Source of the DNA: Oikopleura dioica
Lineage: Eukaryota; Animalia; Chordata
DNA: 64,000 nucleotides
Reading direction: 5' to 3'
NCBI GenBank assembly: GCA_907165135.1
Contig: OU015567.1
Coordinates: 10,354,001 to 10,418,000 of the forward strand
A program made the position numbers and the translations under genes. Under the pieces are notes generated by a model. The model made no database searches, was not told where the DNA came from, and worked only from the letters and a program-made list of their open reading frames with translations. How positions within the stretch are numbered: position 1 is the first letter of the stretch; each line of letters opens with the position of its first letter. Positions 216 through 6,154 of this stretch are shown one piece after another.

Positions 216-303
216 AATGTGTTTCATGCAAGTAATTGTTATTTATGTTTATTGGACAGATCAGTAATCTAAAAATTAGGCGGGTCAGTGATTTTAGCTA
301 AAA

Positions 304-819
304 CTAATTAATGATATTCGTGATGAAAGTAATAACTATTAGTCCGCAAAAGCACTTGCATATACAGAAAAGACACTGGCAACAGGAGCAATCTTCTTCA
401 TTGTTTCGAGCTGTTCTTGTTGAAACTGTGGATGAATAAGGAAAAGTTGAATAAGATAGCGGCTGGTTTGTGTAGACAGGCTCAGTATATCGGTCATGAC
501 GCATATTCGTTCTTCTGGTGGTTGTCGGATTTCCATGTGGTTGTGAACTCGTATGAAAATTGTTCCTTTGAGGCTGAGGAAGTGCGGGGACTGATGAAAT
601 AGCAAGTTGAGCATAAGCGCTTTCCCACCACCTCCCACATATGCATTTATAATATCCAAAAAGCCGCCCATCACCGTGATATTCACGTTCTTCTTCAATT
701 TCAAACAATCTCTCCCCACAAGATCTACAATCAATTTCGTACTTCTGATAGTCAGTTGAAAATTGTTCATACTGGCAGCGGTAACAGTAAAATTTTCTTT
801 TTATCCAGGCTCTAGCCAT
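304..819 (-). CDS. Small zinc-finger protein with a ZAR1/3CxxC-like motif and a Cys-rich hydrophobic C-terminal tail
   Basis: ATG at 819 directly follows AG. Contains CYRC-x15-CRSC and FGYYKCICGRWWESAY, resembling ZAR1 YGYYHCxxCxxRWESAY. Tail is DCSCCQCLFCICKCFCGLIVITFITNIIN. Confidence 0.65.
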   Translation of the reverse strand: MARAWIKRKFYCYRCQYEQFSTDYQKYEIDCRSCGERLFEIEEEREYHGDGRLFGYYKCICGRWWESAYAQLAISSVPALPQPQRNNFHTSSQPHGNPTTTRRTNMRHDRYTEPVYTNQPLSYSTFPYSSTVSTRTARNNEEDCSCCQCLFCICKCFCGLIVITFITNIIN

Positions 820-898
820 CTCTTTTTTCAATAAAAACACAAATCAGAACAAATAGCAAAGCGCAGAGTAAATATTAGGAGTTAGTAAGAAGAGTTTA

Positions 899-3800
899 TT
901 AAAGATGAATATTGTGCATATAACGAACTCGATGATTTCCATATTGATTTCTTCTCGCGGTGATTTCTTCCTCTCGAAGCTCATTCCTCGGTCTTCTTGG
1001 TTTAGGGATAGGGACGTGTTTTACAACTTCATTCGAATGAACATTTCTTTCAACGATATGTTTTTGTCTGATGCTTTCTTCAAACTCACGCTTTCGTGCT
1101 AATAATTGTCTATAAATAATCAAGTAGACCAAAAAAAACCTGTAACGACAGTCTGCGAAATCGAAAACAGGTATCGAAAGATGATGAAAACACTCGCATT
1201 GCTCATGAAGTTCCAGATAATAATGACTATTCGATAGATGGATAAAAGGTAATTATCATGCAGAAAGCTTGGGACTTACTAGGCGATGAATTTTGAAAAT
1301 AAATATAGTGACAGATTGAATTCTCGCCCTTCCTGTATCTGTGCCTGCAGAGAAGAAGGATGATGACATTAGATAATACACAGAATCGCCAAAGGACCAC
1401 CCTTCGATCTAATAATTTTCAATGTTACCTGATGAATTCGCTAAAAACTTCACCTGTGAAATAGCATTCGATGGTATAAGCACAAGAAAGCAAACCCAAA
1501 ATGAAATAAGAAAAAGTACAAAACCAACGTGAATTCTATACTTTTTATCAGACGAATAATTCTTCCCAAGCTTGTCAGCGTAATTATTAACCTTCGCAAG
1601 AACAAATGAAGAAATTGAGAAATATAAAGCCAGGAAAGCGCAGATGCCAACAAGCGAATAAAAAACCTTGAAAACCTTTCCCGATGTTGTGAAGGGCTCC
1701 ATGTCTTTGCTCCCCAAAACGGCGATAGTATTGAAAACGTAGAAAAGAGAGTTTTTGTAATTCCAGAAATTCGGACAAGTGAATGTTCCATTTTCAGTGC
1801 CATAAGAAGGAACGAAGTTTTGGAGCGAATCGTGTATTTTCTTTTCCGGCTGAAGATAGGAGTCTGTTCCGTAAATCGATCCGTTCATCATCCTCTTTGG
1901 AACCCGACAATCCAAATATTTTTCAAGAGTACTTTCAAGATTGGCCCCACAGGTGTCTATCTTCTCCGATTGATCTTCAACCAGCTTTTCTTTGTTGATA
2001 AGAATGAGTTCTACTTGCTTCAGTTCCTCCGCCATTCTCATTTCTGATTCTATAGCTGAAGTGAGATTTCTACTGAATTCAGTCGATAAGGCTCTCATAA
2101 AATATATCGATTGACTCTTTGCCTCTTCTAGCTCGTCGATTACTGAATTGACATCGTTAATAATATGCTTGATGCGCTTAGGTTCGTCAACAAGAAAGTC
2201 GACTACAAATCGTTCAAAAAGACTGTCCACCTCGCACGTTATGTTTCCTACATCATCTCGTGTTTTTTGAAGCTTGGCGATAGTATACAGCCGGTCTCCT
2301 TGCTTCACATCGATGAGTTCTATTGACTGATTAACTGTTAGATTTGCTCTCTCAACAAGCAACTCCACTTCGTCTCTTATAATCCCACTGACAGATGATA
2401 GAATTGATTCTGAAAGCCTTCTGGCCTCAAGATTCGCTCTTGTCAAACCGAATTCCCAAATTTGAGTCTCACCAATTGTTACATTTTCAAATACTGGGTC
2501 TGTCAAGTTGTAACTAAATAAAGTCAAGTTCTGGGTAACGACGGTTAGATTTCTCGATATTTCCATCAGCATGTCAGTCACGTTGCCATCAAGAGCATAG
2601 GGGATTCTGACATTGTCCAGAGTGAAGCTGAACTAATCAAATTCTATTAAATTTCAATTATCAAGCATTCTTACCGTCGCACTTTGATCGAATAAAAGAT
2701 TACTTTTTCCATTTATATATGTCATGTTCTGCATGATTTCATAAACACATGGCGGCAGTCCCTGTCTTTTCAATGCTTCACATTCTTCGGACTCAACTTC
2801 TATAACTTTATCGACTTCTTTGATGATTTCTTTAACTTCAGGTTCTTCGCAAACGCACTCGCTAGCTTTCTCTGTCGCTGAAGAAACTGTAGTAGATACT
2901 GTTGACACTGTCATATTGTCTATGGTTACATTTTCAGGTGACACTGCAGTCGCACACTTTTCGTTTGTTTCACAAATTTCTGCTTCAAATTCTCCACCGA
3001 GGCACTCATCACCAGACACTTCACACTTTCTATTGCGATAAAGAACTCCAGTACCACAAGTCTCAGAACAATCAGACCAGTTCGACCATTCAGTGATAAC
3101 CGGACAGGTTGAATTCAAACAAGGCTGGTTTTCGATGTAGTCCTCCTCAAGATTGGCGCAAAGTCGGACTTCATCAACGGGCAAAACGGTGAATCTTTCG
3201 CTTGGAATAGCTGCAAATTCATTATAATTCTGCTTCTTTTGGCCACAAGATCGACTTCGTTGCCTGGTGCCAAGTCCACATGAGCTTGAACAGCTTCCCC
3301 AGTCGGCCCAAGACGTCCACTCGTAATCAAAGAAGTAGTTTGAAGTTTGACGACAGTTCGTTGATATTTCAAACTCTTTCCTGTCGATAAAATCATCGCA
3401 CTTAGTACTGAACCAAATATAATTTGCGTTTCTCTTCTCCTTTGCAATCAAATCGGCTTGCATCCCATTCGGAAGCTTGAGAATCAATCTTTCAAGACAT
3501 ATCGCAGTTGAGCCACTCCATTTCAGCGTTAATTGAGCGAAATCGTTTACAAATCGAAGTCCTGTTGTTATCGAAGAAGTCTTTAGTCCTCCAAACAAAC
3601 TTAAATTTAAAATTGAATCGTAATCATTTGAACTTGCAAATTTACCTTTTATATTCATCAGCATTCTCGAATTCCTTGTTCTCCTCGTTGATCCCCGAAA
3701 TAGAAACTGTGTGAGAGAAAAATCCTCGTGGGAGGATCGCAAGATCATCAGCATATCATCATCTGGAAGCTCCATGATGATTGCCCCGTTTCGTTGTGGG

Positions 3801-4307
3801 TACAGAAGCTGTACTCCAACAGAATGCTATCAATATTTACTTGCCGTCGAATTCTCGCTGGTGCCGGGGATATTGAATAAGTTTCAGTTGCTTCAGCGAC
3901 AGTAAAGTTTTGGGTAGATAGGATCGTTTTTGGGGCTAGAGTCGAGACATCAAATATTGCTGTTGTAATGTTCAGTTCTGGTGGGAGGGTCGCATTTGGA
4001 AAAATAAGCTCTCTGGTCAAATACTCTTTCGTTTTCTCGTAATTTTCGATCCTTCAAGAACATTTGATAGTGAAAGGGACACTGATGCTTACTGAATTTC
4101 AATTTCTTCAATCGCTTCATTACAGAGTCTCTTTTCCAGGGGATGCTCAAGTAAGCTGAAAATGTATGCGCCGACAAGGATGTAGAAAAAATAAAAAGAC
4201 GCCACTAGAATTCTTTTAACGTAACGTTGTTTCGTCGTTAATCTTATTTTTGCATATTTTGCTTTTTCGTCCTGCGGAATTTTCGGGTAATAAGCTCTCC
4301 TTGTCAT
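899..4307 (-). CDS. Two-pore-domain (K2P/KCNK-fold) channel-like protein, ~1,040 aa, with a huge TSP1-containing M1-P1 ectodomain and degenerate pore loops
   Basis: M1 YILVGAYIFSLLEHP; P1-M2 WNYKNSLFYVFNTIAVLGSKDMEPFTTSGKVFKVFYSLVGI; P2 IEGWSFGDSVYY. In-frame GT-AG introns at 4052-4092, 3809-3840, 2633-2674 and 1409-1453 join ORFs 4089..4307, 3748..4020, 2654..3775 and 1409..2581. Joining the last exon needs one extra T in the 1131-1138 run. Confidence 0.75.
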
Positions 4308-4580
4308 ATTTACAATTAGTTTGTGAAGGAAAAGATGCGGAAGCGCGCGGGGGTTTTGAATTTTTAAGGGTTCATGAATTTCAAGCGGGTTATTCTTGTA
4401 TTTATAAGAGAATGCAGGCTGCTTTGTTTTCCATATGCTCTTGATTAGCCTGCTATTGAGAGTGATTTACTGGTGTTTTTATAATCAATGTTATTGTGGA
4501 TAACCTGCATCAAATCAATTACAAACTAAAAGATAAGAAAAAGAGGTTTATTTCTTGAACTTATTATTTCAAAAATGAAT

Positions 4581-6154
4581 TTAATATTCCTCTTCGTCTT
4601 CTTCGCCCTCAGCGTCGTTGGTGTCCATTCCAACTTCCTCGTAATCCTTTTCCAAGGCTGCGAGATCCTCTCGGGCTTCGGAGAATTCGCCTTCCTCCAT
4701 GCCTTCACCGACATACCTGAAGGTAACTTTAGCTCTTGCATATTTGAGTATTCTTACCAGTGGACGAAGGCTCTCTTCGCGTACATGAGATCGAACTTGT
4801 GGTTCAATCTCGACCAGGCGTCTGCGATCGCCGTCGTGTTAGAGAGCATGCAGAGTGCTCGTCGAACCTTGGCGAGGTCCGAGTTCGGCACGACGGCGGG
4901 TGCCTCGTTGTTGATGCCAACCTTGAAGCCGGTTGGGCACCAGTCGACGAATTGGACGGATCGTCGAGCTTTGATGCCGGCGATCGCAGCGTTGGCATCC
5001 TTGGGTACAACGTCGCCGCGGTAGAGCAGGCAGCACGACATGTACTTGCCTAGACAAAATTTTAGGATTAGTTTTCTCTTTTAAAAATTTACCAGTTCTT
5101 GGGTCGCATTTGACCAGCTGTCCGCCCGGCTCGAAGCAAGCGTTGGTCAATTCCGCTACAGAAAGCGATTCGTGGAACGCTTTTTCGGCGGAAATGATCG
5201 GCGCGTAGGTCGCCAACGGGAAGTGGATTCGTGGATACGGCACCAAGTTCGTTTGGAACTCGTTAAGATCCACGTTGAGCGATCCTTCGAATCGCAGCGA
5301 AGCGGTGATCGAGGAGACAACCTGAGCGATAATTCGGTTAAGGTTGCTGTACGATGGTCGCTCTACGCCGAGTCTAAAGATTTTCGGTTGGATAATAAAA
5401 TGGCGTTGACAATCTTACCTCTTCGTACAGAGATCGTAGATGGCCTCATTGTCGACCATAAACGCACAGTCGGTGTGCTCCAGAGTCGTATGTGTGGTCA
5501 AGATCGAGTTGTAGGGCTCAACCACGGCAGTCGACACCTGCGGAGCTGGGTAGACCGCGAACTGGAACTTCGCCTTCTTTCCGTAGTCGACGGAAAGTCG
5601 CTCCATCAGAAGCGAGGTGAAACCGCTTCCGGTGCCGCCACCAAAGGAGTGGAAGACCATGAAGCCCTGGAGACCGGTGCAGTTATCCGAGAGCTTTCGG
5701 ATTCGGTCCAGGACCCGGTCGATGATCTCCTTGCCGATGGTGTAGTGGCCACGGGCGTAGTTGTTCGCTGCATCTTCCTGAAAATGATTTTAGTCCGGAA
5801 TCATAAAAAAACTGCTACCTTGCCAGTGATCAGCTGCTCCGGGTGGAAGAGCTGCTTGTAGGTTCCAGTGCGGATCTGGCCGATGACGGACGACTCCAAG
5901 TCCATGAAGACGGAGCGAGGAACGAATTGGCCGGTTCCAGTCTCGGAAAAGAACGTCGAGAAGTTCTCGTTGTTCATTCCTGCTGGAACGGTTCCGTCGG
6001 GGTTGATCCCGTGCTCCAAGCAGTAGAGCTCCCAGCACGAGTTGCCGATTTGGCAACCGGCCTGAAAATAGGTCAGCGATTGAAAAATAATATTAATTCT
6101 ATCTCTCTGTTTTCGCTTTACCTGGCCGACGTGGATGGAGATAACTTCCCGCAT
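4581..6154 (-). CDS. TUBA: Alpha-tubulin, divergent, 5 short GT-AG introns
   Basis: [52 protein letters not shown]-terminus ...EEDEEEY*. Confidence 0.97.

What the first reader, a model, noticed from the sequence alone, without database searches (positions are those of the whole stretch)
1766..4130. K2P channel whose cap is replaced by a ~750-aa thrombospondin/coiled-coil ectodomain
Seen: three in-frame GT-AG micro-introns (41, 32, 42 nt) join the K2P M1 exon to the P1-M2 exon. The intervening sequence encodes a furin-like RIRR site, a possible PLAT-like segment, two TSP1 repeats (WTSWADWGSCSSSCGLG..RSRSC; WSNWSDCSETCGTG..RNRKC), a T/E-rich stalk, many NxS/T sites and a long coiled coil. Known: the M1-P1 cap of KCNK channels is ~55-60 aa, and I know of no K2P with adhesion repeats there. 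Inference: a receptor- or adhesion-like channel chimera that could sense matrix, house material or ligand, possibly processed proteolytically.
Basis: partly seen in the sequence, partly recalled or inferred. Interest (0 to 1): 0.82.

Follow-up and report, generated by a model that had tools for sequence, protein, structure and literature searches.

The report
K2P channel relative with giant ectodomain
This tunicate (Oikopleura-type) gene encodes a two-pore potassium-channel relative whose small outer cap has grown into a roughly 750-residue adhesion-type domain, an arrangement I found in no paper, and in this species both ion-selectivity filters are also lost.

Summary
The core of the finding holds. 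One minus-strand gene (4307 to 899, about 1,060 aa) joins a K2P M1 helix to P1-M2-M3-P2-M4 through a roughly 750-aa extracellular insert. The insert holds a conserved R-x-R-R motif, an unclassified domain, two TSP1 repeats, an acidic Cys stalk and a predicted dimeric coiled coil.

No usable RNA evidence was obtained. The single-gene reading rests on comparison: every exon junction is bridged by an uninterrupted ORF in at least one of three independent related contigs (L005, L012, L007).

- The 32-nt "intron" is coding in the orthologs. It compensates for one-base homopolymer differences, which the allelic copy on contig C11 lacks.
- A real 46-nt intron (3645-3600) was missed.
- The P2-M4 intron is GA-AG.
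- A T8 run breaks the C-terminal frame.
- PLAT is not supported.

The gene is under purifying selection (pN 0.10-0.30, pS saturated), so it is not a pseudogene. Distant relatives keep canonical TIGYG/TIGIGD filters on a TREK-like core. The three O. dioica-type sequences carry VLGSK / SAG-x-D instead.

Function is inferred only: a matrix-tethered K2P-type dimer. Earlier scan notes s1-360638 and s1-378191 on the degenerate filters agree.

The parts
4093..4307 (-). Exon 1: start codon, cytoplasmic N-terminus, M1 helix (about 4214-4149) and the post-M1 motif LLEHPLEKRLC
   Evidence: Translation. Hydropathy segment at residues 32-53. All 13 weak PDB matches are K2P M1 helices. 75% identical to the L012 M1 exon.
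4052..4092 (-). Intron 1, 41 nt, GT-AG, phase 2
   Evidence: Read-through hits TAA at once. L012 has a 40-nt GT-AG intron at the same place and phase.
3646..4051 (-). Exon 2 (corrected): N-glycosylated linker, RIRR|Q motif (3855-3844), first half of an unclassified domain. Contains two one-base homopolymer deficits (G4 at 3787-3784, T5 at 3722-3718).
   Evidence: The allelic copy L001 has G5 and T6 and gives one ORF (L001 111-491) that follows L005 and L012.
3809..3840 (-).
   Evidence: It encodes VNIDSILLEY, homologous to ANINDVIFEY in L005 and ANINDVILEY in L012.
3600..3645 (-).
   Evidence: It restores ..DEYK-S-LFGGLKTS.., which matches the contiguous ..EDYKKLYSGLKSS.. of L005 and L012.
2675..3599 (-). 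Exon 3: second half of the unclassified domain, TSP1 repeat 1 (about 3322-3206), TSP1 repeat 2 (about 3091-2954), T/E-rich Cys-containing acidic stalk (about 2953-2675)
   Evidence: Pfam TSP_1 E 1.8e-16, two stretches. 71% identical to L005, pN 0.16 against pS 0.74.
2633..2674 (-). Intron 3, 42 nt, GT-AG
   Evidence: Precisely absent in L005 and L012, where ..LLFDQSAQ|FSFTLDN.. is one ORF.
1454..2632 (-). Exon 4, one ORF: glycosylated helix-rich region, predicted parallel dimeric coiled coil (2164-1904), Cys-containing pre-P1 segment, P1 with degenerate filter AVLGSKD (about 1774-1697), M2 (1681-1589), M3 (1540-1454)
   Evidence: Ion_trans_2 28.7 bits; dimer score 0.41 against best control 0.00. 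pN 0.10-0.15 against saturated pS.
1409..1453 (-). Intron 4, 45 nt, GT-AG
   Evidence: Absent in L005, L012 and L007, where ..SNAISQ|IEGW.. (L007..CFTYIEGW..) is contiguous.
1326..1408 (-). Exon 5: P2 pore loop with degenerate filter (..SSSFFSAGTDTG..)
   Evidence: tblastn to L005 (E 4e-12) and L007 (E 7e-4). Alignment to the canonical L007 P2.
1268..1325 (-). Intron 5, 58 nt, non-canonical GA-AG, phase 2 (inferred)
   Evidence: Same position and phase as a 56-nt GT-AG intron in L012. No canonical donor keeps the frame. 11% of introns in OKI2018_I69 are non-canonical (PMC8008620).
899..1267 (-). Exon 6: M4 (about 1233-1174) and conserved C-terminal tail ending ..RVRYMHNIHL. The frame is broken at the T8 run 1138-1131.
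   Evidence: L005 (to its contig end), L012 and L007 read M4 plus the tail as one ORF. The tail beyond the break has pN 0.18 against pS 0.75. The allelic copy has T7, so the run length is unreliable.

Best explanation
Shown: the locus is one gene for a protein of about 1,060 aa with four transmembrane helices, derived from a K2P (KCNK) channel. The extracellular M1-P1 loop, normally a 55-60-aa cap, is expanded to about 750 aa. In order the loop contains:
- a short post-M1 helix with a conserved Cys;
- a glycosylated linker;
- a conserved R-x-R-R|Q dibasic motif;
- an unclassified domain of about 150 aa;
- two TSP1 repeats;
- an acidic Cys-containing stalk;
- a helix-rich region ending in a predicted parallel dimeric coiled coil of about 87 residues that leads into P1.
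The same architecture occurs in at least three other independent contigs. The more distant ones keep canonical K+ filters on a TREK-like core. The three O. dioica-type sequences have replaced both filters, yet evolve under purifying selection.

Inferred: the protein forms a K2P-type dimer. Its coiled-coil stalk extends the cap helices and holds the TSP1 repeats and the unclassified domain above the membrane, where they bind matrix or glycan ligands. Binding or pull is passed through the stalk to the pore-loop gate. A furin-type protease may cut after R-x-R-R, separating M1 from the rest.

In this species the pore is probably no longer K+-selective. It may pass other ions or none. I put about 0.85-0.9 on the architecture and about 0.3 on the tether mechanism.
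For: Domains: TSP_1 E 1.8e-16 and Ion_trans_2 28.7 bits (cut-off 22.5). The M1 exon matches only K2P M1 helices, weakly. Hydropathy finds M1, M2, M3 and M4, with no hydrophobic segment in the 750-aa insert, so the TSP1 repeats lie on the extracellular side as the K2P topology requires.

Junctions bridged by ORFs elsewhere:
- L012 has the M1 exon, a 40-nt intron at the same place and phase, then one 595-codon ORF from exon 2 into the helical region.
- L005 has one ORF from exon 2 through both TSP1 repeats into the helical region, and a contiguous M3-P2.
- In L007 an intron splits the K2P motif ALEG|PTEAQLC, so the post-M1 motif sits in the same ORF as the R-T-R-R-Q domain (E 6e-21 against L005). 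P1 through the C-terminus is one 349-aa ORF.
- The window itself has the helical region plus P1-M2-M3 in one ORF.

Collinearity is shown by tblastn. Skipping exons 2-3 would shift the frame and reach a stop after 18 codons (read).

Selection: pS 0.72-0.89 (saturated) against pN 0.10-0.30 in every segment, including the pore and the tail.

The L007 core matches TREK-1 and TREK-2 at E 4e-38 and has two Ion_trans_2 stretches. The L012 core against the L007 core gives E 3e-39.

Homodimer model of window:1763-2260: score 0.41, best control 0.00, partner pLDDT 70, runs agreeing in at least 70% of contacts. That mark was reached by 21 of 30 solved homo-pairs and 0 of 23 solved single chains. Contacts are in register at i/i+3/i+4 spacing.
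Against: - No transcript evidence for any junction. The only RNA runs offered come from a divergent lineage. About 10 reads per run matched, all under 95% identity and only partly, and no joints were found. The one informative loose end equals L005 genomic sequence, where that junction has no intron.
- As assembled, the window copy has three frame problems: G4, T5 and T8. The allelic copy fixes two and worsens the third (T7).
- Intron 5 needs a non-canonical GA donor.
- Pfam does not detect the second pore domain in the O. dioica-type sequences.
- Structure models of the ectodomain were unusable (pLDDT 35-39).
- The dimer pass is a model score only.
- There are no data on expression site, ligand, cleavage or conductance.
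Confidence: 0.8

Rival explanations
1. Two or more genes: a secreted TSP1/coiled-coil protein gene nested between, or merely adjacent to, the exons of an ordinary K2P gene. The apparent continuity would be an artefact of joining ORFs.
For: No RNA junction evidence was obtained. O. dioica genes are densely packed.
Against: The helical region and P1-M2-M3 share a single ORF in the window. In L012 and L005 the TSP1 repeats share a single ORF with exon 2 and the helical region. In L007 the K2P post-M1 motif shares an ORF with the ectodomain's first domain. The M1 exon has no other pore exon to join. Order and strand are conserved in four contigs.
Confidence: 0.03
2. A decaying pseudogene in this genome: the frameshifts at the G, T and T8 runs are real, and the lost selectivity filters are part of the decay.
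For: There are three frame breaks in the assembled sequence. The allelic copy also breaks at the T run (T7). Both filters are degenerate. The window's Ion_trans_2 match scores among the lowest of the 78 in the genome.
Against: All breaks lie in homopolymer runs of a Nanopore-based assembly (PMC8008620). The region is also present twice in the assembly (primary plus C11 copy), which would hamper short-read polishing; that last step is my inference. The allelic copy reads through two of the three breaks. Every segment, including the tail beyond the T8 break, shows pN far below a saturated pS against two other lineages. The degenerate filter residues GSKDMEP are identical in three lineages, so they are conserved rather than drifting.
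Confidence: 0.07
3. Rival on function: in O. dioica the protein no longer conducts ions at all and acts purely as a dimeric adhesion or scaffold receptor that keeps a K2P fold as its membrane anchor.
For: Neither pore loop has the T-x-G-[YFL]-G signature. P1 carries a Lys where the second Gly should be. The ectodomain and the C-terminal motif are as conserved as the pore.
Against: The pore loops, M2 and M3 are under the same purifying selection as the rest (pN 0.15). The replaced filter residues are themselves conserved, which suggests a retained pore-related role. Nothing here tests conductance.
Confidence: 0.3

Closest known systems
K2P / KCNK two-pore-domain potassium channels, closest solved: TREK-1 (KCNK2) and TREK-2 (KCNK10)
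   Same: The order M1-P1-M2-M3-P2-M4. The M1 motif G-A-x-x-F-x-x-L-E-x-P-x-E. An Ion_trans_2 pore domain. The canonical-filter relative L007 matches TREK-1 and TREK-2 at E 4e-38. A dimeric helical element precedes P1, as in the cap (model only).
   Different: The M1-P1 loop is about 750 aa with TSP1 repeats, instead of a cap of about 55-60 aa (cap size from general knowledge of the family). In the O. dioica-type sequences both filters lack the K+ signature (VLGSK, SAG-x-D).
TSP1-repeat extracellular proteins (properdin, spondins, ADAMTS, CCN)
   Same: Two repeats with WxxW, CSxxCG and RxR layers, above the Pfam TSP_1 and TSP1_spondin cut-offs. The nearest non-family database hits of the ectodomain are nematode properdin-like proteins.
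   Different: Here the repeats are a loop inside a polytopic ion-channel fold, not part of a secreted or single-pass protein.
P0004, an unannotated MMETSP protist transcript product (2,117 aa)
   Same: A K2P-like protein with about 1,300 aa between M1 and the first pore loop, including a C-type lectin domain. It is an independent case of an adhesion-type domain in this loop.
   Different: It is a protist protein with four pore domains in tandem. Its ectodomain is unrelated (lectin and Cys-rich repeats, no TSP1), and its filters are canonical.
Ion channels with protease-processed or tethered ectodomains (ENaC cut by furin; MEC-4 DEG/ENaC with matrix tethers). Analogy from general knowledge only.
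   Same: A conserved dibasic R-x-R-R motif in an extracellular domain, and the idea that an extracellular attachment controls gating.
   Different: An unrelated fold. Neither cleavage nor tethering is shown here.

Membership tests
K2P (KCNK) channels | Four transmembrane helices and two pore loops in the order M1-P1-M2-M3-P2-M4 | tested here: met
   Hydropathy segments in exons 1, 4 (two) and 6. P1 and P2 align to the L007 canonical core.
K2P (KCNK) channels | Two Ion_trans_2 pore domains per subunit | tested here: inconclusive
   The first domain is above the cut-off (28.7 against 22.5 bits). Pfam does not detect the second in the window or L012 pieces, and it is seen only by alignment to L007. 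L007 has two stretches (97 bits). The joined protein was not scanned.
K2P (KCNK) channels | K+ selectivity signature T-x-G-[YFL]-G in both pore loops | tested here: not met
   Window, L005 and L012: P1 is ..AVLGSKD.., P2 is ..SAG[TAS]D... The signature is present in the relatives L007, P0002 and P0138, and in the P2 of P0139.
K2P (KCNK) channels | Short helical extracellular cap (about 55-60 aa) between M1 and P1 | tested here: not met
   The loop is about 750 aa by exon arithmetic. Helical segments flank it, so the cap may be expanded rather than replaced. No usable structure was obtained.
K2P (KCNK) channels | Homodimer | tested here: inconclusive
   Model of two copies of window:1763-2260: score 0.41, best control 0.00, pLDDT 70, mark reached by 21 of 30 solved homo-pairs and 0 of 23 solved single chains. 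This is a model score, not a measurement.
Thrombospondin type 1 repeat | Match to Pfam TSP_1 above the curated cut-off, with the WxxW, CSxxCG and RxR motifs | tested here: met
   60.5 bits against 21.6, two stretches. The motifs are read directly and are conserved in L005, L012, L007 and L008.
   No PLAT hit at E<=1 in the window exon or at E<=0.1 in L005 and L007. The Atlas feature search was blank. The AF2 models were too poor for a fold search.
Furin / proprotein-convertase substrates | An R-x-[KR]-R motif in a lumenal or extracellular segment, and actual cleavage | not testable with these tools
   The motif is present and conserved: ARIRRQ, VRARRQ, VRVRRQ, NRTRRQ. Cleavage needs an experiment.

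The most novel reading that the evidence does not exclude
A tunicate-specific family of matrix-tethered K2P channels. The TSP1 and coiled-coil ectodomain would act as a gating tether onto the filter gate of a TREK-like core. In O. dioica the K+ filter would have been rebuilt into a conserved alternating Lys/Asp ring (P1 G-S-K-D, P2 G-x-D), giving a channel of new selectivity gated from outside by matrix or house material.
Probability: 0.15. Interest if true: 0.9.

Novelty: new variant of a known kind. Interest (0 to 1): 0.72.

Why it matters
The extracellular cap is the structural hallmark of K2P channels, and as far as I know it has only been described as a small helical dome. A conserved family in which that cap carries adhesion repeats on a dimeric stalk would show that the K2P pore can be coupled to an extracellular receptor module. 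It would also give a natural test of whether force or ligand binding applied from outside can drive the filter gate of a TREK-like channel. The family contains its own control: canonical-filter members alongside filter-lost members that are still under selection. Three full-text searches found no paper linking K2P channels with thrombospondin repeats or with Oikopleura. On the practical side, gene models in this Nanopore-based assembly can hide homopolymer frameshifts behind plausible micro-introns.

Tried and rejected
- RNA evidence: 24 runs were listed, and none is on record as holding the stretch. I laid four raw-read RNA runs on 250-4560. About 10 reads per run matched, all under 95% identity and only partly, with no joints. 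The single-cell run gave none. The loose end at 1455 equals L005 2676-2705, where the junction has no intron, so at most it suggests the ortholog is transcribed in an L005-like lineage. It says nothing about splicing.
- Ectodomain structure: AF2 on L005:141-608 alone gave pLDDT 38.8. AF2 on a 14-row alignment of the 595-aa L012 ORF gave pLDDT 35.4. Both are unusable, so no fold search was run.
- The Atlas feature search was blank.
- 3' end splice models considered and rejected: GTAAGT donor at 1279 with acceptor at 1227, which removes the conserved ..YLLSIYRI..; GT at 1312 with AG at 1268, which is off by one base; introns of 29, 30 and 41 nt around the T8 run, which remove sequence that is coding in L005 and L012.
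- Taxon of L007: its flanking ACAD10-like gene has Styela clava as best named hit at 46%. It is a metazoan and probably a tunicate, but the species is unknown.
- Search for a second copy of the ectodomain in this genome: only the window locus and its C11 copy were found.
- Annotated O. dioica protein containing this ectodomain: none within the length limits of the word search. That is not evidence of absence.
- The adjacent alpha-tubulin gene (4754-6154) was kept out of the search and read tools because it is highly conserved.
Full report
**What is in the sequence.** On the minus strand an ATG at 4307 opens an exon that encodes a basic N-terminus and a 22-residue hydrophobic helix. The motif ..VGAYIFSLLEHPLEKRLC.. 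follows. Searched alone against all PDB sequences, this 71-aa exon matches only K2P channels, at their M1 helix. The matches are weak (best E 0.026).

Downstream on the same strand, Pfam finds two TSP_1 repeats (E 1.8e-16, 60.5 bits against a cut-off of 21.6). It also finds one Ion_trans_2 pore domain (28.7 bits against 22.5), at the end of a 393-codon ORF whose first 280 residues are extracellular-looking. That part has 11 NxS/T sequons and is charged and poor in Pro and Gly.

**Source genome.** The assembly has 64,281,565 bases in 19 contigs. This fits the published O. dioica OKI2018_I69 assembly: 64.3 Mbp, 19 scaffolds, Nanopore reads polished with Illumina, median intron 49 bp, 11% non-canonical introns (PMC8008620). 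Named OKI2018_I69 proteins also map at 94-99% identity to this genome. The identification is an inference.

**RNA evidence failed.** No listed run is on record as holding the stretch. Three bulk RNA runs and one single-cell RNA run with the same species label gave about 10 partial reads each, all under 95% identity, and no joints. The informative loose end at 1455 is letter-for-letter L005 2676-2705. Those runs therefore come from an L005-like lineage in which that junction has no intron. At most this suggests the ortholog is transcribed there. It does not show splicing.

**Comparative evidence replaces RNA.** A full HMMER search with exon 4 found a 74%-identical fragment (P0001), fragments with 35-42% identity, and ordinary K2P channels. 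Fetching their contigs gave three independent comparators.

- **L005** (ENA, 3.0 kb, genomic). One ORF runs from the exon-2 equivalent through the R-A-R-R-Q motif, both TSP1 repeats and the stalk into the helical region. It lacks the window's 46-nt and 42-nt introns. M3 and P2 are contiguous.
- **L012** (Logan, 4.7 kb, genomic, 85% identical to L005). It holds the whole gene: the M1 exon, a 40-nt GT-AG intron at the same place and phase as the window's 41-nt intron, and then a single 595-codon ORF reaching the helical region. After a 50-nt intron comes P1-M2-M3-P2, then a 56-nt GT-AG intron, and then M4 plus the C-terminal tail in one ORF.
- **L007** (ENA, 22.6 kb, much more distant). The same order appears on one strand. 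A 308-nt GT-AG intron splits the K2P motif as ALEG|PTEAQLC. The post-M1 motif therefore lies in the same ORF as the R-T-R-R-Q domain, which matches L005 at E 6e-21. Three TSP1 repeats, the stalk and the helical region follow. A 349-aa ORF then holds the pre-P1 segment, P1, M2, M3, P2, M4 and the tail.
- **L008** repeats the order TSP1, TSP1, stalk, helical region.

Taken together, every junction of the window's gene is bridged by an uninterrupted ORF in at least one lineage. The introns differ between lineages at exactly the predicted exon borders. Skipping exons 2-3 would shift the frame and hit a stop after 18 codons (read), so a TSP1-free isoform cannot arise by simple exon skipping. This supports a single gene strongly, though not as directly as cDNA would.

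1. The 32-nt 'intron' (3840-3809) encodes VNIDSILLEY. This is homologous to ANINDVIFEY in L005 and ANINDVILEY in L012.
2. The frame break that it bridged comes from run lengths. A 98.9%-identical allelic copy on contig C11 (L001) has one more G at the run 3787-3784 and one more T at the run 3722-3718. It then reads as one ORF that follows the orthologs.
3. That frame needs a real 46-nt GT-AG intron at 3645-3600. The junction ..DEYK-S-LFGGLKTS.. then matches the contiguous ..EDYKKLYSGLKSS.. of L005.
4. No canonical donor keeps the frame between P2 and M4. L012 has a GT-AG intron there in phase 2. The window has GA at the same position, giving a 58-nt GA-AG intron (1325-1268).
5. The T8 run at 1138-1131 breaks the frame between M4 and the tail. 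L012 and L007 read M4 and the tail as one ORF, and L005 does so up to its contig end. One more T would restore this, but the allelic copy has T7.

All three breaks are in homopolymers of a Nanopore-based assembly. They lie in a region present twice in that assembly, which would hinder short-read polishing. I read them as probable assembly errors. This needs accurate reads to settle. The corrected protein is about 1,059 aa, and the M1-P1 loop is about 750 aa.

**Not a pseudogene.** Against L005 and L012, synonymous differences are saturated (pS 0.72-0.89). Non-synonymous differences are 0.10-0.30 in every segment. This includes P1-M2-M3 (pN 0.15), P2, M4 and the tail beyond the T8 break (pN 0.18).

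**Family membership and filters.** The L007 core has two Ion_trans_2 stretches (97 bits). It matches TREK-1 and TREK-2 best (E 4e-38), with the filters TIGYGN and TIGIGD. Fragments P0002, P0003, P0138 and P0139 are also canonical in the pore loops they cover. The window, L005 and L012 instead carry ..AVLGSKDMEP.. in P1 (identical in all three) and ..SAG[TAS]D.. in P2. This agrees with the earlier scan notes s1-360638 and s1-378191.

The L012 core still aligns to the L007 core at E 3e-39. All members share the C-terminal motif ..YM[HN]NI-x-[LV]. The protein is therefore K2P-derived, but in this species it fails the defining K+ filter test.

The nearest canonical paralog in this genome is P0140, at 40% identity to the L007 core. 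It lacks the shared tail. Neither of the two ectodomain queries run against this genome, the L012 N-terminal part and the L007 TSP1-stalk ORF, hits its locus.

**The ectodomain.** No hydrophobic segment interrupts it, so it lies wholly on the extracellular side, as the M1-P1 loop does in K2P topology. The motif R-x-R-R-Q is conserved in all four sequences. The domain of about 150 aa after it has no Pfam or Atlas match and could not be folded. PLAT is not supported.

Two copies of window:1763-2260 were modelled as a pair. The score was 0.41, the best of three controls 0.00, partner pLDDT 70, and the runs agreed in at least 70% of contacts. That mark was reached by 21 of 30 proteins solved as homo-pairs and by 0 of 23 solved as single chains. 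On eukaryotes it was reached by 17 of 29, so a pass may partly reflect memory. Contacts are between the same residues of the two copies at i/i+3/i+4 spacing over fragment residues 33-119, which is window 2164-1904. This is the pattern of a parallel in-register coiled coil ending about 45 residues before P1. It supports a dimeric stalk but does not show one.

**Mechanism (inferred).** I propose a K2P-type dimer whose cap helices are extended by the stalk. The TSP1 repeats and the unclassified domain would bind matrix or glycans, and the stalk would couple that binding to the pore-loop gate. Convertase cleavage after R-x-R-R is possible. In O. dioica the pore is probably not K+-selective. The conserved Lys (P1) and Asp (P2) two positions after the surviving Gly would form an alternating ring in a dimer, which hints at a changed selectivity rather than a dead pore. 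None of this was tested.

**Novelty.** Full-text searches linking K2P with thrombospondin, tunicates or Oikopleura found nothing relevant. A protist transcript product (P0004) has a C-type-lectin-bearing insert of about 1,300 aa in the same loop. Large adhesion-type inserts in this loop therefore exist elsewhere without annotation.

**Limits kept.** All searches were run exon by exon, by reference.

Noticed in passing
G000:C11:51227-55405 (L001) against window 471-4600: A 98.9%-identical second copy of the locus sits on a small contig, most likely an unmerged allelic haplotig. Its 30 substitutions cluster in the stalk and intron 3 (window 3005-2620). The indels are all in homopolymers.
   Followed up: yes
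L005:1672-1915: A lineage-specific intron in the helical region carries an insert of about 200 nt with long terminal inverted repeats, which looks like a MITE. L012 has a plain 50-nt intron at the same site, and the window has none.
   Followed up: partly
window 1325-1268; L012 about 2886-2941; L005 about 2758-2815: The same intron position has a GA donor in the window and a GT donor in L012. L005 has either GG or a GT donor 20 nt further on. This is a compact example of donor dinucleotide turnover between O. dioica-type lineages.
   Followed up: partly
window against L005 and L012, whole gene: Four of the window's five introns (46, 42 and 45 nt absent, 58 nt shared) differ in presence from L005 and L012, which have one intron the window lacks. 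Intron gain and loss is rapid between lineages whose proteins are 70-85% identical.
   Followed up: partly
G000:C2:2745000-2754999 (L019), minus strand: The nearest canonical-filter paralog (P0140, named OKI2018_I69 XSR.g14001) is annotated without an M1. An M1-like exon (..GGVVFMWLEKPEEERVC..) lies about 3.6 kb upstream on the same strand. Several same-strand ORFs lie between, and one has an EGF-like Cys pattern. This is either a second enlarged-loop K2P or a nested gene.
   Followed up: partly
P0004 (MMETSP transcript product, 2,117 aa): A protist K2P-like protein with four pore domains. It has about 1,300 aa between its first M1 and P1, including a C-type lectin domain.
   Followed up: partly
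window 931-899; L012 3285-3314; L007 8252-8281: The C-terminal motif ..[RK]V[RQK]YM[HN]NI-x-[LV]-stop is conserved in all family members, both canonical and filter-lost. It could be a PDZ-type or trafficking signal.
   Followed up: no
window 4754-6154, minus strand: An alpha-tubulin-like gene lies directly upstream of the K2P-like gene on the same strand. It was read only in the ORF list and was kept out of all search and read tools because it is highly conserved.
   Followed up: no
window 304-840, minus strand: A 178-aa ORF rich in CxxC pairs starts about 60 nt downstream of the gene's stop codon on the same strand. It has no Pfam match at E<=0.01.
   Followed up: partly
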